DNA of 64,000 bases from Selaginella moellendorffii (taxonomy: Eukaryota; Plantae; Lycopodiophyta): NCBI RefSeq assembly GCF_000143415.4, contig NW_003314281.1, positions 670,833 through 734,832 of the forward strand. The letters run 5' to 3'. A model generated the notes under the pieces. The model was not told the DNA's origin. It did no database searches and was given only the letters and a program-made list of their open reading frames with translations. The translations under genes were made by a program, and so were the position numbers. Shown here one piece after another: positions 1 through 16,784 of this stretch. Position 1 is the stretch's first letter. Each line of letters begins with the position of its first letter.

Positions 1-1564
1 CATTGGGTGCTATGTTTCTAGGCATTAACTTTGCTTTTAATATGGTCTTTATTCAATTGACCACCTCATAATTCACACAAATCAGGTGACTAATCTATGA
101 CTTGTGTTATGGTTAACTTCAAAAATGTTTTACAATGACATGTCATTTGGATATTCAAGAGCTTTGGCCTCTGGTTGGATCAAGCCCATTAAATTTAAGA
201 GCAAGAGTATTGATTAATTGAGGGATTGGAATGCTTGAAATCTGTAGTATAGGGGGATTGTAACTTAAATACATGAGCAAGCCATGCTAGAGGGGTGGGT
301 GTTGTGGCAGCATGTAAACAGTCAAATGCAATGGGATGTAATTGTCTCTTCACCGTACCTCATTTATATTTTTTATCATGCCACATTCAATTAATTCTAA
401 TAATCTTGTAGTTCAATCCAATTAGTCTTTGATTTCCTTGATTTGGGATTGATAAGATGATGTTTTATTTAATTATATATATAAAGAATAACATTTTTAC
501 TATTGAGCGAAAGTTAATTAACTTTCACAATGGAAGTAAAAAAAACATCCACTTCCTCCTTCCTTTTCACATGTTGAAGTAGTTTAAAAATGTTAAGTTT
601 GCCCAAAGATAATAGTTTTTTTGTGAATTTAATTAAAAATTCAAAATTAGTAAACAATTTAAAACTTAGAAATTCTTAATTGTCATTTAAATTGTTCATC
701 TTTTGAATTTAGTGTGCCTTTTATTTTTTCTTTTTATTTTCCTAGCCTCCTTAATTTTTATTTTAAATTCTAACTAACAATTTAAACCACCACTGCCTAA
801 AAAACAATAATGTTTCTTCTTTTTCTTGAAGAGATACCAAGAATTTCGCTAGACTAATTAATTTGTTTTTTCGGCAATTCATAAATTACAGACCTTACAG
901 AATATTTTTAAATATTTTAATTTTAATGTTAACATTGGGATTTTAGGAAAAAATGCTAGTCTAATTTAATATTTATTTTTGGTGTGAATAAATTAATATT
1001 AAATTAAAGTCTATAAAAATGGTGTGAACACTTTACTATTAAATTAATTAGTTCCAAGGATTTTATTTTGTATGTTGGCTTTTTGAATTAGTAATGAAGA
1101 ATTTTTAAAAAAAAATTTAATTTTATTAATTTTTTTATATAGTGTTTTTCGCTAAAACTTTAATATGCTGTATAGTAGATATATATTTTTTCTTAATGCT
1201 GATCATGAATTTTAAGGGAAAATAAAGAGATTGATCATTATAATTTTAAAATTCTCAAAATAAAAATAAAGTTTCTTATAGTCGGAATAAATATGGATAT
1301 ATATTGTTTTTGAAATTTTTTCTAGAGGAAATTTATTTAAAGTAACATTACTCAATTTTGGCATCAAACATTCAAAATGTGTTAAAAATAATTAATTGTG
1401 CTAAAGAAGTAATATTAAAATATAATTTTAAGATTTACATGGTTGTTATAACCTTTAATTAAGGTAAATATTTTTATTATTATTTAAGATGTTAATTTGT
1501 TTTAAAGGTTGAACATTTATAAAATTTATGTGTTTTGGGAAGTAAAAAAGAGGATTTGTGATCA

Positions 1565-1849
1565 ATCCTAAATGTGAATAAAATACATTAATGTGAATTA
1601 AGTATGAATAGGAATATATTAAACTAACTAATTGAATGGGTATATAAACCATTCATCATTAATTTAGGTGTTTTTAAAAAAATATTAAATGGTACTATTA
1701 ACTAATATCCTAAATGTGAATAAAATACATTAATGTGAATTAAGTATGAATATGAATAGATTAAACTAACTAATTGAATGGGTATATAAACCATTCATCA
1801 TTAATTTAGGTGTTTTTAAAAAAAATATTAAATGGTACTATTAACTAAT
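1565..1849. repeat. Tandem duplication of a ~142-bp AT-rich unit
   Basis: ATCCTAAATGTGAATAAAATACATT...GGTACTATTAACTAAT starts at 1565 and again at 1707 with few mismatches. Confidence 0.9.
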
Positions 1850-1877
1850 ATTGATGTGAAAACAATCTTTTGTAGCA

Positions 1878-2300
1878 TTGGGCCTGAAATGCCATAGCAT
1901 CCGCAACCCCTATGTGGGTGTGCTCAACCCAAAGCAACTTGGTGAAGTTGTCAACAAAATCAAGCTCCCAAAGTTCAAACTTAAACAGGGGGTGAAGATT
2001 ATCACCAATGAGAAGGCCACTAATGTGATTGCTTCTAGCTTGGATGATGCTGCCAACATCTGATTTAAATCACTGCCAACAGGAGAAGGTCAAAATTTTC
2101 TCTTTCGTTCTTTTTATTTATGGAGCTAGCTGAGATCCCTGACGTGGACAAGCTGGAAAGATCATTCCAGCCATTGTGACAACGGCACTAGTGACTGTGG
2201 AACAAGGTTTTCCAAGACAAGACGTTCACCAACTTGGCACTGCCGCTCTTCCCAATGGCCAAGCCAATTCCTCCCAAGTCGTTCAACCATGTCAAGGGGA
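1878..2300 (+). pseudogene. UBA1: Ubiquitin-activating enzyme E1 C-terminal fragments
   Basis: NPKQLGEVVNKIKLPKFKLKQGVKIITNEKATNVIASSLDDAA, then EIPDVDKL / GKIIPAIVTT / TFTNLALPLFPMAKPIPPK, match plant E1. Stops and frameshifts are present. Confidence 0.8.
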
Positions 2301-2409
2301 CCTCTCCTGGAGAGATTGACAGCCTACAGCATCTCGTGTGGCCAAAGCCTGCTCTACAACAGCTTGTTCCAGAGCAGCTCATTCGCCACAAGGCGCTGGA
2401 GGATCCACC

Positions 2410-2500
2410 TGTGGATGGATTCAGATACACCGGAGAGGCCTAATCTCCTTGTGGACATGTATGGTAAATGCGGCAGCTCCGCGGCACAAGGAGCGCATGT
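2410..2500 (+). pseudogene. PPR gene fragment
   Basis: NLLVDMYGKCGS is a typical PLS-PPR motif; here it is isolated. Confidence 0.55.
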
Positions 2501-3655
2501 CAGAGCTCGCAAAGGAGGTGGCGAAGCTGGTTCTATGGGCTAGAGGTGATTGTGATAGAAGAAAAACAAACAAGAGTAACAAATGTCTCTCAATGGTTTT
2601 CTGAATGGTGGTATTTACAGAGCAGATCACTCACCTAATTATAGATGCGTTGCCTCGCTTGAGCAGCCTGATTTGAATGGCAGGTCATCACAGGGAGAAA
2701 GAAGGCGGCGGTGGCACACCGCCACTAACATCAGTGCTGTACGTCGCCAAGACCTCAGTTAGGCCTGCTCCCTAGATCATCACGTTCAAAGATCAAAGAG
2801 ATTCTTGGCCGCCAGCACTGTGGAGATCATGCTCGACAAAATACCACCACCACCTCCAGGATTAGAATATCGCCGTGAATTGCGTTTCTTGAAGTTGCAA
2901 TGTGCGCCCTTCGAGTGATGATCATCTGCTGGTTGCTCGATGGAAAAGGCGCATAGTCCTTCCTCCCTAGTCGTGTTGCTCCACCGAATTCTGTTCAGCT
3001 GCCTCGTCCTACAATACTGCGAACAAAACATGTTTTTGATCTATGTCCTTGCAACGGTCATGATCATAGGATCACTGCACTGGCATCATTCTCGAAGCTC
3101 ACGCAGCTTCTCATCGCTAGCAGCTGCTTCGTTTCCATCACTATCTCCTCGTAGTGGATGACGGGCTTGGCCAGGCACTCGGCCTCCATGAGCAGCTCTT
3201 TTGCTGCTGGTGTCCATGCGCATCGGAGCGCTGCTGGGCGTCCGCCCCAATCACCGTCCCGAGGATGTAATCTGCAGCTTGCTGCCGCCCACCATGGGAT
3301 CCCTGGGACTATCAAACACTCCTCCTTCCCTGGACGACAGAGCGCGAGATAAGAACGCAGACATAGGTGCATCGATCAGGAACTGAGGCAGAACTTCGTG
3401 TTGCTCAAGCGGTAGAGTCGCCTAGCGAGTGTTGGACGTCTGGATCAACACGTAGTGAATATGGAAAACACACGCTGTTTATAGTAAGACTACTTTTGGG
3501 CAACGTAGCGAGCGAGTGGCAGGGAAAAAAACTTATTTGCCAATGGAAGTGAGAGGCAGACAACAGACACGCTCAAAGTGCACGACTTTCGACGTGGGAT
3601 GGTCTTCACCTGCTTCAGTTTGTCTGATAGAAGCTGTTGACTCAAGTGAAAAAAA

Positions 3656-3910
3656 ATGAGTTTGTCACAGTACCTGGCCAACCTCGCGATGTCAAATTGG
3701 ATGCCAGAACATGAATCTGTCGTACGAGCTGCGACGCATGGTTCCATCAATTCTTGGCGCGCCAACAATCATCTTTGGAGCGGATGTCTCTCATCCCATG
3801 GCCCGCAAAGTCCCTCCATCGTGGCGAGCATGGACTGGCCATCGGCGGTCAAGTATCTCGCTTGGGCGAAGGATCGAGCACCAGCAAGGAGATGGTGGTC
3901 GAGCTCATGA
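3656..3910 (+). pseudogene. AGO: Argonaute MID/PIWI fragment
   Basis: QYLANLAM, PTIIFGADVSHP and SPSIVASMDWPSAVKY are split over two frames. Confidence 0.85.
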
Positions 3911-4219
3911 GGTAACACCCGACTTACGACATCCAATATGCTGGAGAGTTTGTCTTCTACCTTTGCACTACCGCTTGACAAGAATGGCTTCAAGATCGAG
4001 CAGCCCCATTTCCAAGCACTCTAGAAAAGGATGCCGCATCACTTTTTGGTTTGATCCAAGCTGCCAGACATGTTTGAAACTATGCGATTCAGCGGGAACA
4101 AGTACATGAAGAGTCTTTTAGCTAGCTAGACTAGGAAATAATCGTTACCGTCGGTTGTCGGACGCATCTGAGCCCTTGAATCCTTGTATAAGAAAGGGAA
4201 TAGAGAAAAGGAGGTAGGG

Positions 4220-4534
4220 ATGGATACGAAGGAGACGACTCGCGTCACGGGACCGGATGAGTATGGTCTGATTCAGGCGTTTACACCTGTGGATTGGAAC
4301 GGGCAGAAGCGAATCCTCCAAGCGCTCTACGTCGTCGAAGATGGCTTCCTTGAGGCTGCTGCGAAAGTGGACAAGTGGACTCCAGCCGTGATCGAGGACG
4401 CAGTGCAGCGGAGAATGATCACGGATTATGGGGTTGCCAATGTCGCCGAGGATGATCTTGTGGAGCCGATTAGGATCTACGAAGTGAGAGAGAGGATGAT
4501 CAAGAAAGGGGTGCTCCCAGCAGAGTATCAGTAG
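4220..4534 (+). CDS. Small protein of unknown function, paralog A
   Basis: Intact ORF from the ATG at 4220; collinear protein-level similarity to 7050-7436 (TGP..YG.IQ.F.P.DWNG.KR.LQ..YV...LEAAAKV.KWTPA.IE.A). Confidence 0.6.
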   Translation: MDTKETTRVTGPDEYGLIQAFTPVDWNGQKRILQALYVVEDGFLEAAAKVDKWTPAVIEDAVQRRMITDYGVANVAEDDLVEPIRIYEVRERMIKKGVLPAEYQ

Positions 4535-4599
4535 AATGTCTATAATCAAATAATCCCTGCGCCTTGGCGGCAGAATCCCAGGGAGAATGCTTCTTCTCC

Positions 4600-6910
4600 T
4601 TCTTCCTCGCCATTGCAGCAGGGTTTTTACTTCAAGTTCTTTCAAGTTCTTAGATTGAGCGAGGACATGGCGGTAAGCTTGGCGGTGAGGATTTTCTAAC
4701 ATACAGTCGTAGACAAATGCCAATTGTTAACAAGCACTCCAGGCTTCAGCTCCCTTTCACAGTAATTTCTTCCAATGGTAAACCAATATTGAAGTTCCAC
4801 TTTCTACAAAAGCAACTCACAACTTTCAAACTAATGGCGAAATTCTTTCTGCCTGCGGCCCAGTTTTCCCAGGCAGGCATTCGCTGAAATACCTTCTCTC
4901 GAGGTCCTCAGAGGTAGAGGCTCACGAGCTCAGCGCTATGAGAATACCTGGCAATGTTCTCTGTCAGTGTTAGTGCTCGCTCTAAGTTGATGAGCTTTTT
5001 ACCTCTTTGTATCCCTCCACATAAGGTTGTTGATAGCCTGTGAACCCCCCATGCCGAATAGAGCTGATGCCTCTCACTCCTGCTCGCATAGGCGCCTATG
5101 TTGATGTAAATCTTATCTCTTTGCTGCTGTATAAGCTCCTTTGCAGCCCTTCGAGACTTAGCACTCTTGTCGATGTTCTGCAACGCGTGGATCTCCCAGG
5201 CGATGCACGGTGCCTCTTTTGTAGAAAGCTGAAAGAAAAGAAGCATAAGTTTTGTAGCGCCTGGTGTATACGGGATTCACATACCTCAGATGAAGAGCTG
5301 ACCGCAGTGAGCATCTTAAACCTCAAGGAACGGGTCAGTAGATCGACGTCTTGCTCCTCCCACACTGCACAGAGCCTCTTCAAGGACGATGTCAAGCGAT
5401 TGTCGCTAGAGTGACAAGTGCATGTGGCGCCAAAACTAGAGTTGCCTGTCCGGGACTCCTCGGTTCTTAATGCTTGCAGCTGGAGGTGGCACTGGCGTTG
5501 GTTCCGAGGAATCCAGTGACTCTTCCAGACCTCCAACTTTGTCAAAAAGCTTCTCCAGCAGGATGTTCTCGCAGGAGAACAAGGCCTTGACGTACTCTAT
5601 CGAAGCCGACAGGTTTGGTATCTCGAGCAAAAAGTCTGCAAGACTTAGCTTCGCAGTGTGCTTGGCGAGTTCGTCTTCTTCTTGCTCCGTCTGTCGCGGT
5701 GGAGTGGCCGCCCCAGCTCGGACATCAATTTCTTCTCCGCACCCGAGGAAAGAGAGGACTCCGGTCTTTCCAGCTGCTCAAGCCGCGTAAAAGTTGCATC
5801 GAAATCAAGCGAGGCAGAAGTTTTGCGCTTTGGAGTGGAAATCCCAGTCTCAGCACCAGTCTCAGGAACGTTCTCAGCAGAGACTTGCATAGCTCGGCTG
5901 TCTGGATTCATAACCGGCGTGGTGTAATCAGCCTGCTCTGGAACTGGAGAGAACTCAAAAGCTTTCATCGTTTCTTCGGTCGACACACTCCGACAGCTCC
6001 AGTGGCAGTAGCCGAGCCAACTCCGTAAGAATCTGTGGAAGAAATGTCCGTGAAAGGGAGTCTTCGTACTTGAAGCCTGGCGTGCTTGACAATCGGCAAT
6101 CGTCTTTCCGCAGCTAGGACTTTCAAACCTGTAGATGGAGAAACTTTTAGAAAATCCTTGGCAAAGAGAGATGAAAGGGAGCCTCACCGTGCTTCAGCTT
6201 GCATTCTATTCGTTTGTCCAGATTCGTAAACTTGGAAGTTGATGGATAGATCTTACATTCGGGTCTCGCAGGCGACGGAAAGGGAGAGACGTGCTTGTGA
6301 TTGTCTTCCAGGTGCCTGCAAACCTTGCTCCAGTAATACGTTGTCTTCTCTCTTTGAGGACCTTGAGGACAACCTACAGTCTCAAAGAGGAAAAACGAAC
6401 CCTCAGCAAAAGCTGCTACGTTCCATCCATCACACATCGTACCTTTGTGAATCTTAGCTAGAATTTCCCAGTCATGTTGTGTTAGAGCTTCCGAGCAGTA
6501 CCTCATCCAATATGCCACCACTGTGTTCTCCGCGTGCTCTAAATCTCTGGACTAACTACTGTCAGAAACCAACGAAGAAAATAGAGAACGAAGAAAGAGA
6601 AGAACCATACCGGCAGCGTAGCCAGGATGGCTCCAGGCATCGACATGGTAGTGCTCGGAGATCTGGAGAGGCCCAATGCTAGCACCACCGTCTCCATCGG
6701 GACAGTATTGCTCGACTCAAGGAGGGGACGAAGCTATGCTCGATAAGCTCGCATCGCGTCCTCCACACCGCTTCATCTTCCGCGACATTATGACGCTCTT
6801 GCGGACATAGCTCGCCTGCTGCTGCTGCTGCTGATTGCCCGTCTCTTCTTCTTCTGCGATGACGACGTCCTGGCCGGCAGCGCGACCCCATTCTCGGACA
6901 CGCCCGGCAT
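4600..6910 (-). pseudogene. Multi-exon decayed gene with an N-terminal i-type lysozyme/destabilase-like domain; remainder unidentified
   Basis: LESSN, PDGDGGASIGPLQISEHYHVDAW, CRDLEHAENTVVAYWMRY, DWEILAKIHKG-CPQGPQREKTTYYWSKV, with GT-AG introns and frameshifts. Boundaries are approximate. Confidence 0.65.
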
Positions 6911-7049
6911 GGAGAAAGATGAATTTAACCTAACACTCGCCCTAAAATCTCGCCTAAATTGTACGAAATAATCATCACCGTCGGTTCTGTGACCCATCTG
7001 AGCCCTTGAATCCTTGCAATAGGGCGAAGGGTAGGGTCAAAGCAGAAGG

Positions 7050-7436
7050 ATGGAAAGGACGGAAAGGATTGATGAGCTCCGAGACGCCATGGCTGAGCTT
7101 TCCAGGTCTGGTGAGAAGGTTAGCATCACGGGGCCGGGTCCGTATGGTGTGATCCAGACGTTTTCACCTCTGGATTGGAACGGGGAGAAGCGATTCCTCC
7201 AAACGATGTACGTGATCGACGATGACTGCCTTGAGGCTGCTGCCAAAGTGGAGAAGTGGACTCCAGCCGCGATCGAGGAGGCAATGGAGAAGGGAATGTT
7301 CATGGATTGTGGGACTGCCAATGTTACCCAGGACGATCCTGTGGACCCGTTTATCATTCACGAGGTGAAAGAGAGGATGATCGGAAGAGGGGAGCTCCCA
7401 GCAGACTTCTGGGACAATCTTGAATGTAACAAGTAA
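7050..7436 (+). CDS. Small protein of unknown function, paralog B
   Basis: 128-aa ATG ORF paralogous to 4220-4534, with a shared upstream motif. Confidence 0.65.
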   Translation: MERTERIDELRDAMAELSRSGEKVSITGPGPYGVIQTFSPLDWNGEKRFLQTMYVIDDDCLEAAAKVEKWTPAAIEEAMEKGMFMDCGTANVTQDDPVDPFIIHEVKERMIGRGELPADFWDNLECNK

Positions 7437-8629
7437 ATGAAAATCTGTCTGAAATCGATTCAACTCTTGGTTTTTGTGCTTGTGTGTCCAAGGGAGTGGA
7501 AGATCTGTTGTTGGCGAGAAAGCGTTTCATGGTTGGCATAGTAGTCTCTTGGTTCACGAGATCTCAGCGTGAGGACCTCTCTCGAAACCATGAATCGAAT
7601 TTCACGAGTATTCCCTGTGGATATGTCTCTGCCATGCTGAAGGATGGCCACCTGAGCTGCAAGAGCACCATCGTCGTCGGCATATCACCTGCTTGAAATA
7701 CCATTTTGCACCAGTTCTTGTTTAAGCTTGCTTCGATGATTGTGCCACTGGCCTCACGATGAGGATTGGATCGTTAGTCTTGCATCTAGCAGGGAAGCAA
7801 GAAAAATATGAGCTCCAACCTAGATTACTGCACTGTACCTCATCTCCAGTGACGATCGTGGTGGACCTCCTGCTCCAGTGTCGAGAGCTGCTGTCACTCC
7901 TGGTGTTGCCTCATCACTCCTTGTCGAAGAAGAATGAGCGGAAGAAAAAAGAGGTGTAGCGCTCGGTTCCACCAACGTTTTCGTCCTGCTGGACCTTGTG
8001 TCTCCACGATTCCCATCTGCTGGAAATTGTGCTTTGCTCCACAGGACCAGCTGCCGCACCGATGGAAGATACGAGCAACTAATATTCCCGATAGCGCTGT
8101 AGCAGCTAGTCTCATCGGGGAGCAACTCTGACCAATCCCGCTGGATAATACCGCGAGGGTAGTTCAGCAACAAGTCTAGCCAGCATGCTCTGAGCATAGC
8201 TACAGCTGGAGCTGGAATTCTTGGAGAAGCTTTGAGCCGGAAATATCCCGCATACAGCTTTCCACTTTCTGGACAAGCTCAGCGTTCAACCTTACGAAGA
8301 GGTAAAAGCTCATCATTTGAGAATGAGCACTAACTGAATAAGTTCTCAGGTGTGGATACGATTGCATGGTACCTCTTTGTATACTGTCCAAGTCTCCTAC
8401 ATTCCAAAGCACTTGTTCCAGTGAATTCATTGACTCTTTTCAGTCCCCCAACTTTGTCACAAAGTTCCAAACTTGTACACCTAATCTCTTGTAAAAAAGT
8501 GCTAAAGAAATTGAAACAAAAAAACAATGTACCATTTATTAGCATTTGGCAAAATAGGCATAATTCCCTATAAACATTTATCATGTGAAGGTTTAAGAAT
8601 TTATATGTTAATGTTCCTTTTACTTCCCT

Positions 8630-9900
8630 TTAACACTTCAATTGTATATATCATAACTTGTTGTAAGGGGTGTTAAAAATTTGATATTTCCACTTCAATT
8701 GCACCTATCATAATTTGTTGAAAGATGTTAAAAACTTGATATTTTTGAAACAACCATGAAGCTAAAATGTAAAATTAGTAAAAAGAAAATAATTTTGAAA
8801 TTCTTACATATTAGACATTTACTTTTCTTGCAAATTTTTCCTTTGTTCTTCTATGTTTAAAACTGTTATTAGAAGTCTTGAAGCTGTTATATCAATTTAT
8901 TTTTTTAACAAATTTCAATAAATTTATCCACCACTGCTAAAGTGTCCATAAGTTTGTTTTGATACCTACTATGCCCCTGTTTTATCCTCTCTTGCAAAGT
9001 ACAATTATAGGCATTTCTCAACTATCAAAAGGATGTTAAAATAAATGTTAGCAATGATAAAATAAAACACAATAAAAAAGTTTACCATCACAACTTATGA
9101 GAATTATGTTTATATCAACTCCATTGTTAAACTTGCACAATACTTTTGACACTATTATCTTGGCAAAAGACATAATAACAATAAAATTTATAATTACCTT
9201 CAACTAATAATTTCGTATATAGATTCATATGGCACTTTTAGTAAAATTTTAAATATTCTAGAATAAATTATATATTAGTTTAAGAATAAAAACATTATAA
9301 AAACTGTATTAAAATTAAAAAGCTAAAGTAAAAAAATAAATATATTAAATTTAGATATAGTTAATTTATATAATATTTATATGGAGTTTCTTTTGTTATT
9401 TTAATAAATATACTTCAAGAATAGCCGACTTGTTTTCAAAGAGTTGCAAAAGTTTACAATGAACAGTATTACTATAAATGTTTGCATTTAGGCTAGCAAA
9501 ACTTTTATTTAAAATTGCTGAAAAAATTGAAACAAAAAATATAATATACAATTTATAAACTTTATACAAAATTCCATAGTTTTTCACTAATGAATATCTT
9601 GTGAAAGTTTAACAACTCATATGTCAATTTTCCCTCCACTCTTCTTTAACATTTCAATTACATCTATCATAATTTGTTGCAAAATGTTAAAAACTTTATA
9701 TTTCACGAGCAAACATAATTTTTCAACAAAGCTAAAATGTAAAATTAGTAAAAAAAAAGAATATATGATTTTCTTGCAATTTTTTTCTTTCTCATTTTAT
9801 ATTTAACATTGTTATTCTTGATTGAGGAAATCTCAATTTTTTTTTAAAATTTTTTTTTAACACTATTATCATAATGTCTATAAGTTTGATTTAATAGCTT
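8630..9900. repeat. AT-rich degenerate direct repeats, probably TE-derived
   Basis: TTCAATT..ATCATAATTTGTTG...TGTTAAAAACTT and AAGCTAAAATGTAAAATTAGTAAAAA recur at ~8630-8790 and ~9650-9760. Confidence 0.6.
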
Positions 9901-10057
9901 TCATATCCTTGACTCTATAATATTTTATTTATTACTAGTTTTCTTCTATAACAAGTTTATTGGGATGTGTTGTTTGAAATACAACATTTTTTACCATTAA
10001 TGAAAAGTTCAAAGACAAAAAAAATTTAAAAAACTATACGACATTAAAATTTAAAAA

Positions 10058-10060
<3 letters not shown>

Positions 10061-10126
<66 letters not shown>
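10061..10126. repeat. (AT)n microsatellite
   Basis: Perfect AT run. Confidence 0.98.
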
Positions 10127-10129
<3 letters not shown>

Positions 10130-11310
10130 AATATATATATAAAATGAGAGGATGTAATATATGTTAATTTTCTTTTTAGTTTATATTTTAATGTTTGATT
10201 CTTCTTTTCACTCTATGTTGTTTTCTAAAAACACTGTTACAACTAAGGAAATAAATACAAACGTGTCACATTATGAGCCTGAGATTTTTGCAAAACCTAG
10301 CAAATTCATTAAAAAAGATTTTTTTAGTAAATGCTATTTTATTTTGTGGTCTTTTCACATATTTTTTTATACTTGTTTTTTACAACAAGCTTAGTAGGAT
10401 ATATTGTGGGAGACACAACATTACTTGTTGCGGGCCAAAAGTTCACAGTAAAAAACCAACAAAATCAAAATTTATGATTTAAAAATCAGAAAAACTAATG
10501 ACAAAAATAAGTTATAAATGTATGTTTAAAATGTTTTATAAACTTTTTTTTTGCAAGAAATATCATAAAAATTTGGTGCATTTATAACAAATTGTGAAAA
10601 ACATATGAATAATATTTATAAGAAGTTTGAGTTAAAACACTTTTTATAACTTAGAAATAATACTGAATTTAAAAAGATTATATACAAAATTTAATTAATT
10701 TTTATCTTTTAATTTTTATATATGTTACTTTTGAATTTAAATTCAAAATTATTATAAAAAGTTTTAAACCTTAAGAAAATTTCAAGCAGAGCAGACTCTC
10801 AAAACTTTTTTACATTATTCAAGTTAAATTTTCTAAGTTAACACAAAATAAACAGTTTTTAGACAGAAACTAGAAAGAAAGAGTAAGAAAAAAAAAGAGG
10901 AAATAAAACAAAGAGTGCTTGCTTGCTTGCTTTTAGCTAACCAGCTCAGTCCCTCTCAGGCTTGTAAAAGAGTGAAGGCGATCTCTCACGAGAATGCCCA
11001 CGAAAAAGCCCAGAGAATAGCATAGAAGGCTGCTCGCAGAGGGTGGAATGCAAACTTAGCAACAGCGGTGCTACCAAGATTTGCAAGAAAAAAATACCCC
11101 GGAGCAACAGCATCTAGCTACAAAAACTGGTACACTTGGATGGAACCACCAAGCCTAAGGAGCTAGAAAAAGAAGAAGCAGCTCGCACGCCCCCTAAAAA
11201 ACAAACCAAAAGGAGAGGAACTAGATGATCACTGACCAGCGTCATGGTGTCTTGAGGCCGAGCGTCATGACCGTGGCCAGATTATTCCTTAGCCGCCTCC
11301 AAACCGGTGC

Positions 11311-12695
11311 TTAAAAGGTGACCGTCTTGAGAAAATCCCGAAGGGCTCGCACCAGTTCCTCGGGTGCCAGATGAAACTCCTCCTCCATCTGTGCATAAAA
11401 AAATAACTTTGGATCGGTACGAGAAAAACAAAACGAGAAGGTACCTGTGCGGTGAAAGTGAAGTCGTGAACAGTGTCCGAGAAGGACAGTGCGCTGGCGT
11501 TGATCACCAGCAAGTTTAGCTTCTCCAGCTCTCCCAGGCACTTGACCAAGAGGCCCTTGCGCTTCTCGCAGTGAACTCTCACCAGGACGTTCTTCCCCAT
11601 GTAGCGGGCTTCGATCTCCGGAGGACAAAAGTCGTCGTCCGACACGCTCCCGTATTTGTCCTCCTGCTTACTGCCGCCGTGCATTGGAACAGACTTCTTG
11701 CAGTAGGCAACGGACTGGACGCCTTTCCTGGAGACGTGCTCCTCAAGAGACTTCAGCCTTTCTTGCAGTTGCTTGACATACTTGATCGCGTCGCCAAGAA
11801 CCGAGGCCTTGTCCATCTAGAGGAAACATATTCCATCACGTCAAAAAAGCACGACCCATTTTAAAACACAGAGCAAGTGATAGCGTACCTTTTTCAATCC
11901 CGGAACAATGGCGGAGAGTGCGATGAAACGTTGACTGAGCTTCTCTCTCCGCTTCCGTTCGGCCATGATGTGATCCAGCGTGTGCCCGGATGTCTTTCCC
12001 TGTGGGGACGACATCTTGGCGGCACTTGGAGCTTCCTGCTTGATCGCCATGGGACTGGAGAGCTTCTCCACGGATGCCGCCGAGGAGAGCGTGTCCATGA
12101 CTCGGTTGTAGTCCAGGAAAGAGTTCTCCTGAACCACTGAGCCTGGCGAGCCGCCGACCTCGACCTGGATCGTAGGAGTCTGTGGTGCCACCGTCTCGTA
12201 GCCCTCGTCTTGTAGCATTGGGAGATAAGATCCCAGACCTGGAAACCTCTTGTGCTGATACTGGAACCGGCCGCCAGTCTTCATGTTCTTCGAGTCTTGC
12301 AAATAGAGAGGAGGACCGCCGTGTGAGAAGCCTTGGTACTGTTGCTGCTGTTCCCAAGCATTCGACTTTACCATCTTGGCTGGTCGCTCGTAGCAAAGGT
12401 AGTCGTCCACAGTGATATCGGACCTCTGGCGAACACCCAGCTGGGCTCGAGCGAGAGACTCCCCAACTTTGTACTCGATTCCTCCAACCTCGTTGTTGCC
12501 ACCACCACTTTGCCATCCCATGAGAGCGGCCAGATGCTCCGAGGCTGGAGCCGAGAGAGTCACAAGGTTAGGATCTTCCATGCCCTGCAGCAAAACAAAG
12601 AGATCCGTGAGCAAAGAAGAGCAAACGAAAGAACTCCAGACCATTTCCGAGAGCCATTGCACTGGGCAAGTGGCTGGCGAGCGTAGAACCTCCAT
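11311..12695 (-). CDS. bHLH transcription factor (subgroup IVa, bHLH18/25-like) with ACT-like C-terminus; 4 exons
   Basis: DHIMAERKRREKLSQRFIALSAIVPGLKK|MDKASVLGDAIKYVKQLQE; PEIEAR...VLVRVHCEK; GT-AG introns. Confidence 0.92.
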
Positions 12696-13874
12696 CCGGT
12701 GCCAGCGCCCTTTCTTCTCCAATCTGGCGATCAAGCAACACAAGCACAGCCACGCTTCACGAATCAATAGAATCGAGAAAACGAAAGGAAGAGAAAGACA
12801 AGGAAAAAAGTCCAAGCTACAGTGGCGAGGGAGGACTAGTGCTCTTCGCCGTCAAGCGAGGACGAGAGAGGAGCGAATCAGTGCCTCGACACCCTACCTC
12901 TTGCGAAGCGGAGCTCCAAATTCCCGGGAAATCGCCTCGTGGCGAGCTGCAAACACCGCATTTCAGCGCCATTGCACGGATTCCAAACGGCGATCGATCG
13001 GCATCCATTGATCGCTCGAAATCTTGGGGTAGAATCACAACGCACCTCTCACGGACGCGCTCGTCGCCGCCTTCCTTTGCCCCGGCGCAGTAACGAACGG
13101 AGGTTTCTTTTAAGTGGGCTGAAGCCCCCCAAAAGCACAGTGTCCTTGCGCAGCTCACGTTTACACTGCAAGGACTGGTGACAGGTGTCATCCATCGGCC
13201 CAGTGGCAAAAGCATAACATATACCCACTACCGTTGATTGGCCGCATGCCCAACTAGTTAAGCTACCAATGCATTCACATGGACAAATTGGAGATTCTAG
13301 AATATTTTACAGATCCCCAGAGTGGGCGATCATATCCAAGATCTCCATTTGATTACTCCAAACAAAAGAACACTGGGCGCAAACTTTGGATCGATCAAAG
13401 AAAAAACTCCGGCGTTTGTTATTTTAGTCGCGGCTCTTCTCGGACTTGCAACGTGACAAAACACCACTTGCGAAAAGATTCCATGGCATATTCTATCGCA
13501 TCCCAGGAGATTCCTTTGTCTTGAATGGCTGGTAAAGCTGAGGTTTCATGTGTAGGCACTCCCGCAAAGGCTACGTAGATATCTTCCCCTTTTGTGTGGA
13601 AAAAATATCACATGCTTCATGGCCAAGGAGACGAGCCACGTGGTGGTAAAGGTAAAAATCTCACTAAATGGGAAAAGCATTTTTATCTTTATCTTTCCAG
13701 AAGGAATCTTTTCAATCATATATATGATCATTCCTCCCATTGCGCCACGTCACGCGAGCTGATCTGGCGAGCACTTAACTAACAAAGCCGGCCAATGTTG
13801 ACGATGGAAGTTAACAAGAAAACGCGTCAAGCACGATGGAACATTCCACCGTCTGTTAGGGCAAAAAAAATGGG

Positions 13875-15300
13875 CTATGAGTCAGCATCGTGACGCGGAT
13901 GCCGCGTGGCAGACTTGTCCAGCTCAAGCTCTCCCACCACTCGGCCATTCTCGAGCCTGATCCAAGTTCTCGGTTTCTCGCCGGAGTTCTCGGACAGTTC
14001 TATCACTCTCGCGCCTCTCGTCCAGCTTCCATAGCCTCCATAGCCACTGTGCCGAGCAAAACACAGCCAGAGGCCGCCACTGCCGCTTGGGCAGCACCAA
14101 TCCAGGCCGTGGTTATGCCCGACCACCACTGCCTGTGTGATAAGATTCATAGAACTGTTAGAATCGATCGAGAAGTTTTGTAGCGAGTGATCACTTACCT
14201 TTGCCGATGGTCTCTTCGCGAGAATGCCCATGATTCCCCACTCGGCCGACTGGCTCGCGACGTTTTCCTCGTTGAGGGATCCGATGCATGGAGCCGCTAT
14301 GGGCGAGCTTGGCTTTGGAGCCACGGATTCGTAGGCCTTGCTTGGAATGTGCCAGAAGACGAGCTCTTGCGTCCTGGACAAAGTTCCAAAGCGTTATTCT
14401 ACCAGGAAAGTTGGAAAACTTGGATCGAGCAAGAAGGCTTAACTGGTTGTCGGGGTTGAGAGCTGCCGAAACATCTCGGAACCAAGATGCTTGTTTCGCG
14501 GAGATGACTTGCGGGTAAGAACCGCCACCCGAGTCCATCAAGTAGAGAAGTGCTGCTGTGGATCCCGGTTTCCTGTGAGACGCAATTGGAAGAGCGAAGT
14601 TGGAGACGCTGGGCCAGAGTGATGGCGGGCCTTGCACGGAAACGGACAATGCACTCTTGAGATCTTCTTCCATGAGCTCTGCACGACTCGTGCCTTGGAA
14701 GTAGGCGTAATGTCCTGGACAAGGGAAAAAAGAAAGTTTTTCGATAGTTCAACTTGATGATGATCTAAAGTCTACTTGAGAGATTGCTTTTACCTGGTGA
14801 TGCTCCAGGAACTCCGGAAGGTCCAAACCACTGTGCGGGCCATTCGAAGGGCGCGTCATCGTGGTTCCCAAAAACAGCCGCCCATGGAATGCTTCTCTTT
14901 GCGGTGGCCTCGGTTGCCTGCTTCCAGTACTTTGTAGCATTCTTCACAGGAAGATTGTTGGCCGTCAAAACATCACCCAAGAAGACCACCAAGTCTGCAA
15001 AACAACCCAGCTCTCAATCAAACTAAATGAAAGATAGATCTTGGCGAGTTTTTCCCCCAGTTTTTTCTCACCTGGCTTTTCAGCATCGAGAATGTAGGAC
15101 ATGACTCGGTCGGATTTTCGGTCCTGCTCCGGCCCCCAATTCTCCCAGGCATTCTCTCCAAAGTGCAAGTCTGCGAAAGCGACGATCTTAAACTTGCCTG
15201 TGGCTCCATCAAAGCGCAGCGATCTTTTGGGCGAATCCTGGCATGTGGCACGGAGCAAGAAAGAGATGATGAGCGCGACGGAGATCACCACACCACCCAT
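13875..15300 (-). CDS. Calcineurin-like metallophosphoesterase, PAP16/DCR2-like; spliced
   Basis: Signal peptide, [34 protein letters not shown]. Confidence 0.88.
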
Positions 15301-15431
15301 CTTACAAGGAGCAGCATATACTAAGACGCATATACCATTCATCATAAGAAAAGTTAAAATTTAAAGGAGTGTTTCCATGTTATATTCTCTTAGAATAATC
15401 ACTCCGTACTTAAGGTCGTGGCATGAATTTT

Positions 15432-15451
15432 GCCACGTGGTACCCACGTCA
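15432..15451. promoter_or_regulatory. G-box/ABRE pair in the 184-bp divergent PAP16-like/CHL intergenic region
   Basis: GCCACGTGG followed by CCACGTCA. Confidence 0.45.
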
Positions 15452-15484
15452 GACAATGTGATCTGGCAAATCCATTATCCGGCT

Positions 15485-16695
15485 ATGGCTTGCTCAGCGT
15501 CAAGAGCGATCCATCCGGTAGCTTGGGCTCGTCCAGAAGTTCCATCTCCATCACCTTCTCGTCACAGGTGACAGATAAAAATCCAGGCGTTTTTCTTTTT
15601 TATGATCGGTTTTGCAGCCAAGGGGATCATGTCAAGCTGCCTTCCGCGGCAAACGTTGCTCAACGCGCTGCAGTGGCGGCGGCTGTTCTAGTCCTATGCA
15701 CGAACACGAGCGAGGTAAGAAACACTTCTTTAAAGATCACGCACAAAACGTTTCGAGAATCTGGAGTTCTCTAACAGGCCATGGAGCAGACGGCCAATGT
15801 TGATCATTCCTTGGTGTCCACGATCAGTTCGAGCGAAGAAGAAAAGCCGCCGCCATTTATGATGGCCGGGATGACCGCCAAGAACTTTGATCCCGCCAGG
15901 TATGCCGGTCGATGGTTTGAAGTCGCGTCTCTCAAGCGAGGATTTGCCGGACAAGGCCAGGAAGATTGCCATTGCACACAAGTAAGTTCCAAGTTCTCTC
16001 GTTCTCGCTTTGAAACTCTCTTCTTCTTCATGGGCTTTTCATCTGAGATCCTGTACAGGGAGTGTATCGGTTCGACGAGGCCAACCGAGCGCTCCAAGTG
16101 GACACATTTTGCGTGCATGGCTCCCCCGATGGATACGTGACGGGGATCAGAGGTAAAGTCCAGTGTACCGCGGACACCAGCCTCAAGCGCGAGGTGGCGG
16201 CGCTGCAAATCGAAGGTGGCGTCTCCGAGAGGTGCTACCTTCGCTTCCCAACGCTGCCATTCATCCCAAGGGAGCCATACGACGTGATCTCCACGGACTA
16301 CGACTCGTACGCTCTTGTCTCGGGAGCGAAAGACACGAGTTTCGTCCAGGTTGGTTGCTTTTCTCGAAGCTTTTCGAAGATCTCCTCCATTTTTTCGATG
16401 ATCCAACTAGATCTACTCGCGGACTCCAAACCCGGGGCGAGAGTTCATCGACAAGTACAAGGCATTCCTTGGAGAGCTGGGATATGACGACGCTGCGATC
16501 AAAGACACGCCTCAAGACTGCCAGGAGATGTCCATGGGCGATTTGTCAGCGATGATGGCAGCTCCCGGGATGGAAGAGATGATGAGCAACACTTTCTATC
16601 CTCCTCCACTGGGCCTCACCAAAGCGGTGGAGTTCAATCCATTCACGAGCATCTTTGACACCCTGAAGAAGCTTGTCAAGCTCTACTTCTCGTGA
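15485..16695 (+). CDS. CHL: Chloroplastic lipocalin; spliced
   Basis: Transit-like N-terminus, FDPARYAGRWFEVASLKRGFAGQGQEDCHCTQ, PYDVISTDYD, C-terminal FDTLKKLVKLYFS. Confidence 0.92.
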
Positions 16696-16784
16696 ATCTG
16701 ATCAAGACAAAACTTTCTTTTGATCGTGAAAAGTTTTCCTTGTCTTTGATTTACGCGTCGTTTTCACTTCTTGGACTTTCGGCT

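What the first reader, a model, noticed from the sequence alone, without database searches (positions are those of the whole stretch)
6310..6735. Intron-containing i-type lysozyme/destabilase-like domain in a land plant
Seen: stitching minus-strand frames gives LRPLLESSN / CPDGDGGASIGPLQISEHYHVDAW / SWLRCR|DLEHAENTVVAYWMRYCSEALTQHDWEILAKIHKG|CPQGPQREKTTYYWSKV. The GT-AG introns have a donor at 6610 and span 6442-6374. Known: i-type lysozymes and their bacterial relatives show the order ES...GP(Y/L)QI...W.DA...C...YM.RY...ARIHNGGP.G...YW.KV, and they are not a standard plant family. This copy needs at least two frameshifts, so it is probably a pseudogene, but the introns imply a nuclear, once-expressed gene. 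About 1.7 kb of further unidentified coding-like sequence follows and may belong to the same gene. Speculation: antibacterial defence, or remodelling of the plastid peptidoglycan that some non-seed plants retain. Horizontal transfer is possible.
Basis: partly seen in the sequence, partly recalled or inferred. Interest (0 to 1): 0.75.

Follow-up and report, generated by a model that had tools for sequence, protein, structure and literature searches.

The report
Dead spikemoss copy of lysozyme gene
This is a decayed, non-functional duplicate of a spikemoss (Selaginella) gene that joins an "invertebrate-type" lysozyme domain to a conserved helical tail. An intact sister copy lies 10 kb away, so the gene family is real and unstudied, but this locus is an ordinary pseudogene.

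Summary

The window is Selaginella moellendorffii scaffold GL377585.1. The locus (ancestral ATG 6910 to stop 4908, six exons) is a tandem duplicate of an intact gene 10.3 kb downstream (XP_024533603). A second intact copy lies on GL377651.1 (XP_024517734).

Against both intact copies, this copy alone carries:
- nine frameshifting indels (-4, -8, -7, -10, -311, +1, -22, +1, -25);
- one CAG>TAG nonsense change;
- three in-frame deletions;
- Gly>Cys at a family-invariant glycine;
- a neutral-looking substitution pattern (19 non-synonymous : 10 synonymous, against 4:12 in the intact copies).

The GenBank model EFJ26141.1 (UniProt D8RNU3, "lysozyme") is an ORF-preserving artefact.

The lysozyme call is right. 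A family profile hits solved i-type lysozymes at E=2e-16, and the AlphaFold model of the intact paralog matches leech destabilase. The "further 1.7 kb" encodes a disordered linker and a conserved tail that is weakly DUF3490-like.

The family runs from streptophyte algae to mosses, lycophytes, ferns and a conifer, so recent gene transfer is unlikely. This scan had already reported the two intact copies on other DNA (s1-402649, s1-421614).

The parts
4908..6910 (-). Whole footprint of the decayed gene, from the ancestral ATG (6910) to the ancestral TGA (4910-4908). It spans 2003 nt, against 2425 nt in intact paralog A.
   Evidence: Three-way DNA alignments A1 and A2 with the intact copies; tblastn of P0001 on the window; ATG and first stop located.
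6611..6910 (-). Exon 1 remnant: basic N-terminus plus the first half of the lysozyme domain, including the catalytic Glu codon (6718-6716) and the GDG Asp. Lesions: -9 (6899|6898, in frame), -4 frameshift (6835|6834), -8 frameshift (6769|6768), CAG>TAG (6736-6734), -18 in frame (6719|6718, removes DAIRFV), -7 frameshift (6707|6706), -10 frameshift (6632|6631). Read from the ATG, the ORF stops at 6790-6788 after 40 codons.
6547..6610 (-). Intron 1 (GTATGG...TCCAG), homologous to intron 1 of the intact paralogs.
6443..6546 (-). Exon 2, undamaged in frame (DLEHAENTVVAYWMRYCSEALTQHDWEILAKIHK). Carries an Asn>Lys change in the HNGGP motif.
6374..6442 (-).
6188..6373 (-). Exon 3, the end of the lysozyme domain (..CPQGPQREKTTYYWSKV..). 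The family-invariant Gly155 is Cys here.
6129..6187 (-). Intron 3 (GTGAGG...CTACAG).
5285..6128 (-). Exon 4 remnant: the disordered linker and the start of the conserved tail. Lesions: -3 in frame (6089|6088), -311 frameshift (6035|6034), +1 frameshift (5960), -22 frameshift (5713|5712), +1 frameshift (5470).
5229..5284 (-). Intron 4 (GTATGT...TTTCAG).
5003..5228 (-). Exon 5 remnant, the core of the conserved C-terminal tail. A 25-nt frameshifting deletion (5028|5027) removes the most conserved motif, GRLKKIVY.
   Evidence: Weak Pfam DUF3490 hit on window:4911-5276:- (E=0.035).
4948..5002 (-). Intron 5 (GTAAAA...GCCAG).
4908..4947 (-). Exon 6 (..YSHSAELVSLYL plus TGA).
7050..7436 (+). Small ORF of unknown function, head-to-head with the pseudogene; part of the duplicated unit. 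Its paralog lies at 4184-4534 (+).
   Evidence: No Pfam hit and no Atlas hit.

Best explanation
The locus is an unprocessed (duplication-derived) pseudogene in the nuclear genome of Selaginella moellendorffii.

Its parent is a six-exon gene for an intracellular-looking, cysteine-poor i-type (destabilase-family) lysozyme domain. That domain is joined by a long disordered linker to a conserved, all-helical C-terminal domain that weakly resembles the DUF3490 tail of NACK kinesins.

A segment holding this gene and its small flanking ORFs was duplicated. One copy, 10.3 kb downstream on the same strand, stayed intact, as did a copy on another scaffold. This copy lost constraint and accumulated mostly small deletions. 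It cannot make the ancestral protein: translation from the conserved ATG ends after 40 codons.

Shown here: homology, intron sharing, the lesions, relaxed substitution, and the lysozyme fold of the parent. Inferred, not shown: that the locus is not translated into anything useful, and the parent's biochemical role (muramidase acting inside the cell, perhaps on plastid peptidoglycan).
For: - Identity of the locus: L002 1-16697 equals window 16697-1, on GCA_000143415.2 GL377585.1.
- Intact paralogs: the neighbour lies at L002 20331+ (XP_024533603 / EFJ26140). The second copy is L001 10001-12425 (XP_024517734), whose six exons rebuild the protein exactly.
- Lesions: all 13 indels and the nonsense codon are unique to the window copy, while the two intact copies agree with each other at each site.
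- Relaxed constraint: window-specific coding substitutions fall 10/7/12 over codon positions, with 19 non-synonymous (one of them a stop) against 10 synonymous. The intact copies show 4 against 12. Fisher p=0.013.
- Invariant residue: Gly155, present in 29/29 family members, is Cys here.
- Lysozyme nature: profile A3 matches 3ab6, 4pj2, 2dqa and 8bbu at E=2e-16 to 2e-14 across the whole domain, with the catalytic Glu and Asp aligned. 19 of 27 relatives hit PF05497. Foldseek's top six hits are all i-type lysozymes.
- Tail: conserved in Diphasiastrum, Adiantum, Ceratopteris, Spirogloea and a Logan protein at 153-194 bits against my tail HMM.
Against: - No transcript data could be examined, so residual transcription or a truncated product cannot be ruled out.
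- A GenBank protein model (EFJ26141.1, 441 aa) exists for the locus with canonical GT-AG junctions.
- With only three sequences the window-specific branch includes the internal branch, so part of its excess substitutions could predate the loss of function.
- The Fisher test rests on 45 substitutions.
Confidence: 0.9

Rival explanations
1. The locus is still a working gene that uses new splice sites, as in GenBank model EFJ26141.1 (441 aa). It would make a shortened protein with half a lysozyme domain and most of the tail, perhaps a regulator or decoy of the intact paralogs.
For: The model can be threaded through the window with GT-AG junctions and an open frame. All ancestral splice sites are still intact.
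Against: - Only 2 of its 8 introns match those of the intact paralogs. Four have no counterpart, and one is 31 nt long.
- Its first 29 residues come from the wrong frame of exon 1, so it lacks the catalytic Glu78 and Asp89.
- It lacks the tail's GRLKKIVY core.
- The substitution pattern is neutral.
- The protein cluster look-up found RefSeq XP proteins for the two intact loci but only the GenBank EFJ model for this one.
Confidence: 0.06
2. The frameshifts are sequencing or assembly errors and the gene is in fact intact.
For: One 4-nt deletion lies in a CAG repeat where the neighbouring copy also varies in length.
Against: There are thirteen indels of 1 to 311 nt plus a nonsense substitution, a change at an invariant glycine, and a relaxed non-synonymous to synonymous ratio, all in one copy. 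The flanking and intron sequence aligns cleanly.
Confidence: 0.02
3. The lysozyme domain reached Selaginella by recent horizontal transfer from a bacterium or an animal.
For: The nearest non-plant relatives are short metagenomic proteins, probably bacterial. Selaginella is known to have acquired a different lysozyme family, GH25, by transfer (PMC4241558).
Against: - Two spliceosomal introns lie inside the domain.
- Homologs occur in Mesostigma, Chlorokybus, Spirogloea, Closterium, Sphagnum, Diphasiastrum, ferns and Cryptomeria.
- The same lysozyme-plus-tail fusion occurs in Spirogloea, lycophytes and ferns.
- My domain tree is unresolved at depth but places no bacterial-like clade inside a Selaginella-only group.
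Confidence: 0.02

Closest known systems
Intact Selaginella paralogs LOC9637259 (XP_024533603 / EFJ26140, same scaffold, 10.3 kb downstream) and LOC9657483 (XP_024517734, scaffold GL377651.1)
   Same: Same six-exon structure and intron positions. 95-97% nucleotide identity in aligned columns. Same lysozyme-linker-tail order. For LOC9657483, the same flanking small ORFs.
   Different: The window copy has nine frameshifts, a nonsense codon, a 311-nt internal deletion and neutral-looking substitutions. The intact copies are 97.7-98.6% identical to each other and evolve under purifying selection.
Animal i-type lysozymes / destabilase (PF05497; PDB 8bbu, 2dqa, 3ab6)
   Same: Same fold for the intact paralog (TM 0.66-0.72, 27-31% identity). 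The Glu/Asp catalytic dyad is aligned. The motifs GP(L/F)QI, Y(H/W)xDA, YWxRY, HNGGPxG and YWxKV are shared.
   Different: Only 4 cysteines in the domain (2 of them conserved), against 14 disulfide-bonded cysteines in destabilase (PMC10126035). The N-terminus is basic and helical rather than an obvious secretion signal. The domain is fused to a ~500-residue linker and tail. Most members fall below Pfam's cut-off.
DUF3490 (PF11995), the C-terminal domain of plant NACK-type kinesins
   Same: The C-terminal ~75 residues of family members from four lineages match profile positions 63-139 in the same register (E=5e-4 to 0.02).
   Different: All scores (14-20 bits) lie below the 25-bit cut-off. No member has a kinesin motor domain. 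Homology is therefore suggested, not shown.
GH25 muramidase acquired horizontally by Selaginella (Metcalf et al. 2014, PMC4241558)
   Same: A lysozyme-type gene in the same plant genus, outside the classical plant lysozyme/chitinase families.
   Different: It is an unrelated fold and family, with a recent bacterial origin. The present family is spread widely across streptophytes.

Membership tests
i-type lysozyme / Destabilase (PF05497) | Significant match to the family profile | tested here: met
   The window's exon pieces alone give no Pfam hit. A profile of the plant family (A3) matches solved i-type lysozymes at E=2e-16 to 2e-14 over chain residues 11-114. Relatives P0004 (33.5 bits) and P0007 (27.1 bits) exceed the 26.2-bit cut-off, and the neighbour's model P0034 scores 25.4 bits. 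19 of 27 members hit at E<=0.01.
i-type lysozyme / Destabilase (PF05497) | Lysozyme fold closest to solved i-type lysozymes | tested here: met
   AlphaFold2 model of intact paralog P0001: residues 60-185 mostly at pLDDT above 90. Foldseek ranks 1-6 are 8bbu, 8bbw, 4pj2, 2dqa and 3ab6, with target-normalised TM 0.66-0.72. This was tested on the paralog, not on the broken window copy.
i-type lysozyme / Destabilase (PF05497) | Catalytic Glu/Asp dyad (Glu34/Asp46 in destabilase, PMC10126035) | tested here: inconclusive
   In the family, Glu78 is present in 28/29 members and Asp89 in 23/29, and both align to the dyad. In the window copy both codons survive but sit in different reading frames, downstream of a premature stop, so no product can carry them.
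i-type lysozyme / Destabilase (PF05497) | Dense disulfide network (14 Cys per 115 residues in destabilase) | tested here: not met
   The P0001 domain has 4 Cys. Only Cys118 (24/29) and Cys136 (28/29) are conserved.
i-type lysozyme / Destabilase (PF05497) | Muramidase activity | not testable with these tools
   This needs a recombinant intact paralog and a peptidoglycan assay.
DUF3490 / NACK kinesin C-terminal domain (PF11995) | Profile match above the gathering score (25 bits) | tested here: inconclusive
   Scores are 14.3 bits for the window piece 4911-5276(-), 17 for P0001 and P0033, 20.4 for P0026, 17 for P0003 and 15.3 for P0007. All lie at the extreme C-terminus and all match profile positions 63-139.
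NACK-type kinesin | Kinesin motor domain | tested here: not met
   No kinesin family hit in any member scanned.
Unprocessed (duplicated) pseudogene | Introns retained at parental positions, and an intact parent or paralog present | tested here: met
   All five GT..AG introns are conserved. Intact copies lie 10.3 kb away and on GL377651.1.
Unprocessed (duplicated) pseudogene | Disabling lesions and relaxed constraint | tested here: met
   Nine frameshifts and one nonsense codon. The ORF from the ATG stops after 40 codons. The non-synonymous to synonymous count is 19:10 against 4:12 in the intact copies, p=0.013.
Unprocessed (duplicated) pseudogene | No functional transcript or protein | not testable with these tools
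   No RNA-seq was available. Exact look-ups of P0001 and P0002 returned only the genome assembly.

The most novel reading that the evidence does not exclude
The decayed copy might not be inert. It could still be transcribed from the promoter region it shares with the divergent small ORF, and act as a regulatory RNA or a truncated tail-bearing protein that modulates its intact neighbour.

At family level, the intact genes might encode an intracellular muramidase whose NACK-like tail takes it to a division site, linking plastid peptidoglycan turnover to the division machinery in plants that keep a plastid wall.
Probability: 0.08. Interest if true: 0.6.

Novelty: new member of a known kind. Interest (0 to 1): 0.3.

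Why it matters
On its own, this locus matters little. It is a dead duplicate, and its public protein entry (EFJ26141.1 / D8RNU3, auto-named "lysozyme") should be treated as a pseudogene-derived artefact, not as a family member.

Indirectly it is useful. The contrast between its neutral decay and the strong synonymous bias in the two intact copies is evidence that the intact lysozyme-tail genes are under selection, and therefore do something.

The family itself is a cysteine-poor destabilase-type lysozyme fused to a conserved helical tail. It is present from streptophyte algae to a conifer and was not found in the angiosperm-rich databases searched here. I found no paper describing it. Its distribution resembles that of plastid peptidoglycan, which is a testable lead. 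That lead belongs to the intact copies, which this scan has already reported.

Tried and rejected
- **Pfam on single exons and unspliced ORFs of the window**: nothing for the lysozyme pieces. They are too short and too divergent.
- I used exon-by-exon references, the unspliced ORF, and the database protein of the intact paralog instead.
- **Word-based search with the 134-aa ORF**: blank, because of the length filter.
- **phmmer of that ORF against the PDB**: only a chance HapE hit.
- **ESM Atlas** on the tail and on the small flanking ORF: no usable hits.
- **Word-based searches with the tail and with the lysozyme domain of P0001**: these returned only 3 and 5 hits. No kinesin was retrieved, so DUF3490 homology could not be strengthened.
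- **Domain tree**: deep nodes are weak and long branches attract one another. I use it only to say that it gives no support for a recent transfer.
- **PIWI-like motif:** I suspected an Argonaute fragment (PTIIFGADVSHP) in the + strand ORF 3660-4106. Pfam gives no hit, so I dropped it.
- **P0012:** the hit to a Paracaedibacter NB-ARC protein (seven stretches, 30% identity) aligns to the intron read-through part of the query, and I took it for noise.
- **Literature searches** for plant i-type lysozymes or a destabilase-DUF3490 fusion: nothing found.

Full report
**What is in the sequence**

- LRPLLESSN at 6733-6707;
- CPDGDGGASIGPLQISEHYHVDAW at 6704 onward, in a second frame;
- SWLRCR in a third frame, running into a GT at 6610;
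- DLEHAENTVVAYWMRYCSEALTQHDWEILAKIHK at 6545-6444;
- a GT..AG intron at 6442-6374;
- CPQGPQREKTTYYWSKV from 6373.

**Searches on the window's own pieces**

Exons and unspliced ORFs were searched by reference. Pfam found nothing for the lysozyme pieces. It gave only a weak DUF3490 hit (E=0.035) for window:4911-5276:-. The word-based protein search was blank because of its length filter.

The exhaustive HMMER search with the unspliced ORF window:6150-6551:- gave 32 hits. The top two were a 704-aa protein (P0001, 95% identity, E=7.6e-52) and a 441-aa protein (P0002, 99%).

**Where the window comes from, and the three copies**

Exact look-ups show that P0002 is GenBank EFJ26141.1 (SELMODRAFT_413249, UniProt D8RNU3, auto-named "lysozyme"). 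It lies on Selaginella moellendorffii scaffold GL377585.1, and locus L002 1-16697 is the reverse of window 1-16697. The three copies are:
- Copy C: the window locus.
- Copy B: on the same strand, 10.3 kb downstream and 3.6 kb beyond the window's start, at L002 20331 onward. Its models are RefSeq XP_024533603 (702 aa) and GenBank EFJ26140 (833 aa).
- Copy A: P0001 itself, XP_024517734, on scaffold GL377651.1 (L001 10001-12425). I rebuilt its six exons exactly from the DNA.

In aligned columns A and B are 97.7-98.6% identical to each other. C is 95.4-96.9% identical to either. A and C share their flanks: a small ORF head-to-head upstream and a related sequence downstream. B shares with A only the gene from about 160 nt upstream of the ATG.

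**The lesions**

The three-way DNA alignments (A1, A2) show that the two intact copies agree with each other at each of these sites and the window copy differs.

| Change | Position in window | Effect |
|---|---|---|
| -9 nt | 6899\|6898 | in frame |
| -4 nt | 6835\|6834 | frameshift |
| -8 nt | 6769\|6768 | frameshift |
| CAG>TAG | 6736-6734 | nonsense |
| -18 nt | 6719\|6718 | in frame; removes DAIRFV just before the catalytic Glu |
| -7 nt | 6707\|6706 | frameshift |
| -10 nt | 6632\|6631 | frameshift |
| -3 nt | 6089\|6088 | in frame |
| -311 nt | 6035\|6034 | frameshift |
| +1 nt | 5960 | frameshift |
| -22 nt | 5713\|5712 | frameshift |
| +1 nt | 5470 | frameshift |
| -25 nt | 5028\|5027 | frameshift; removes the tail's GRLKKIVY motif |

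Read from the conserved ATG at 6910, the frame closes at 6790-6788 after 40 codons. All five introns keep their GT and AG: 6610-6547, 6442-6374, 6187-6129, 5284-5229 and 5002-4948.

**Relaxed constraint**

Substitutions were polarised with the three copies and classed in the intact reading frame.
- Window-specific changes fall 10/7/12 over codon positions, with 18 non-synonymous, one stop and 10 synonymous.
- Changes private to A or B fall 1/3/12, with 4 non-synonymous and 12 synonymous.
- Fisher's exact test gives p=0.013.

The window copy also has Cys at Gly155, which is invariant in 29/29 relatives, and Lys at Asn153. This is the signature of an unprocessed pseudogene beside functional paralogs.

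**The public gene model**

Threading EFJ26141.1 through the window gives nine exons. Only two of its eight introns coincide with the paralogs' introns. Four have no counterpart, and one of those is 31 nt long. The real intron 5 is read through, and the first 29 residues come from the wrong frame of exon 1. The model therefore lacks the catalytic residues and is an ORF-preserving artefact.

**Is it a lysozyme?**

- An alignment of 27 relatives (A3) searched as a profile against all PDB sequences hits the i-type lysozymes of Meretrix (3ab6, 4pj2), Tapes (2dqa) and the leech destabilase (8bbu). E-values run from 2e-16 to 2e-14 over essentially the whole domain, with the family's Glu78 and Asp89 on the catalytic Glu and Asp (dyad per PMC10126035).
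- Nineteen of the 27 hit PF05497 at E<=0.01, two of them above the curated cut-off.
- An AlphaFold2 model of P0001 built on a 29-sequence alignment has two confident regions: residues 60-185 and an all-helical 568-704. The rest is disordered.
- Foldseek's six best PDB matches are all i-type lysozymes, with TM 0.66-0.72.
- The domain differs from the animal enzymes in having 4 cysteines rather than 14, and in a basic helical N-terminus rather than an obvious signal peptide. The second point is judged by eye and was not tested.

**The 1.7 kb that follows**

It is the rest of the same gene: a long disordered linker and a conserved tail. A tail HMM built here scores 153-194 bits in Diphasiastrum, Adiantum, Ceratopteris, Spirogloea and a Logan protein. 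Pfam DUF3490, the C-terminal domain of NACK kinesins, matches that tail in four lineages in the same register. Every score is below the cut-off (14-20 bits against 25), and no member has a kinesin motor. I therefore call it DUF3490-like, not a member.

**Distribution and origin**

Named relatives come from:
- Mesostigma and Chlorokybus (short forms);
- Spirogloea and Closterium;
- Sphagnum;
- Diphasiastrum and Selaginella;
- Pteridium, Adiantum and Ceratopteris;
- Cryptomeria.

There are also short metagenomic proteins. No angiosperm protein appeared, but my searches were not designed to prove absence.

A domain tree is unresolved at depth. Introns inside the domain and the wide streptophyte spread argue against recent transfer. 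The known transferred Selaginella lysozyme is GH25, an unrelated family (PMC4241558).

The plastid-peptidoglycan idea fits the distribution and the known peptidoglycan dependence of chloroplast division in charophytes, mosses and Selaginella (PMC4015805). It is untested.

**Relation to earlier scan notes**

The scan had already reported the two intact copies (s1-402649 is copy B, s1-421614 is copy A). I confirmed their positions, lysozyme nature and tail myself. I could not check that they are expressed. The Cryptomeria member extends the range those notes gave.

**Verdict**

The locus is an ordinary duplicated pseudogene of an unusual, unstudied plant gene family.

Noticed in passing
window 4746-6697 (-): GenBank EFJ26141.1 / UniProt D8RNU3 ("lysozyme", 441 aa) is modelled on this pseudogene. 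Four of its introns have no counterpart in the intact paralogs, and one is only 31 nt long. It should be flagged as a pseudogene artefact.
   Followed up: yes
window 4184-4534 (+) and 7050-7436 (+): Two paralogous small ORFs (81% nucleotide identity, about 55% amino-acid identity) flank the pseudogene. Related copies flank intact paralog A (L001 9624-9843 and 12919-13128). There is no Pfam or Atlas hit. Mismatches show no third-position excess (24/17/15), so they may be decaying too, or may not be coding in that frame.
   Followed up: partly
proteins P0003, P0069, P0026/P0051, P0007, P0013 (relatives, not in the window): Most full-length family members (Spirogloea, Sphagnum, Diphasiastrum, Adiantum, Ceratopteris) carry IQ calmodulin-binding motifs between the lysozyme domain and the tail. 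None was detected in the Selaginella copies.
   Followed up: partly
protein P0010 (Cryptomeria japonica GLJ42882.1): A conifer protein carries the same lysozyme domain, interrupted by an insertion, with no detectable tail. This extends the family into seed plants, beyond the range given in the earlier scan notes.
   Followed up: partly
protein P0070 (SELMODRAFT_426776, scaffold GL377651.1): A further, more divergent Selaginella protein (474 aa) is 49% identical over the lysozyme domain of P0001 by BLASTP, but it matches my domain HMM only partly (positions 15-73). It may be another degenerate or mis-modelled copy.
   Followed up: no
window 1-2000 and 8000-10000: Very AT-rich stretches (25-29% GC) bracket the 50%-GC block at 2000-8000 that holds the pseudogene. 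A 142-143-nt tandem duplication lies at 1565-1851.
   Followed up: no
window 3660-4106 (+): An ORF containing PTIIFGADVSHP, which I recalled as a PIWI-domain motif, is part of an annotated 180-aa model joined to the small ORF at 4184-4534. Pfam gives no hit, so the resemblance is unsupported.
   Followed up: partly
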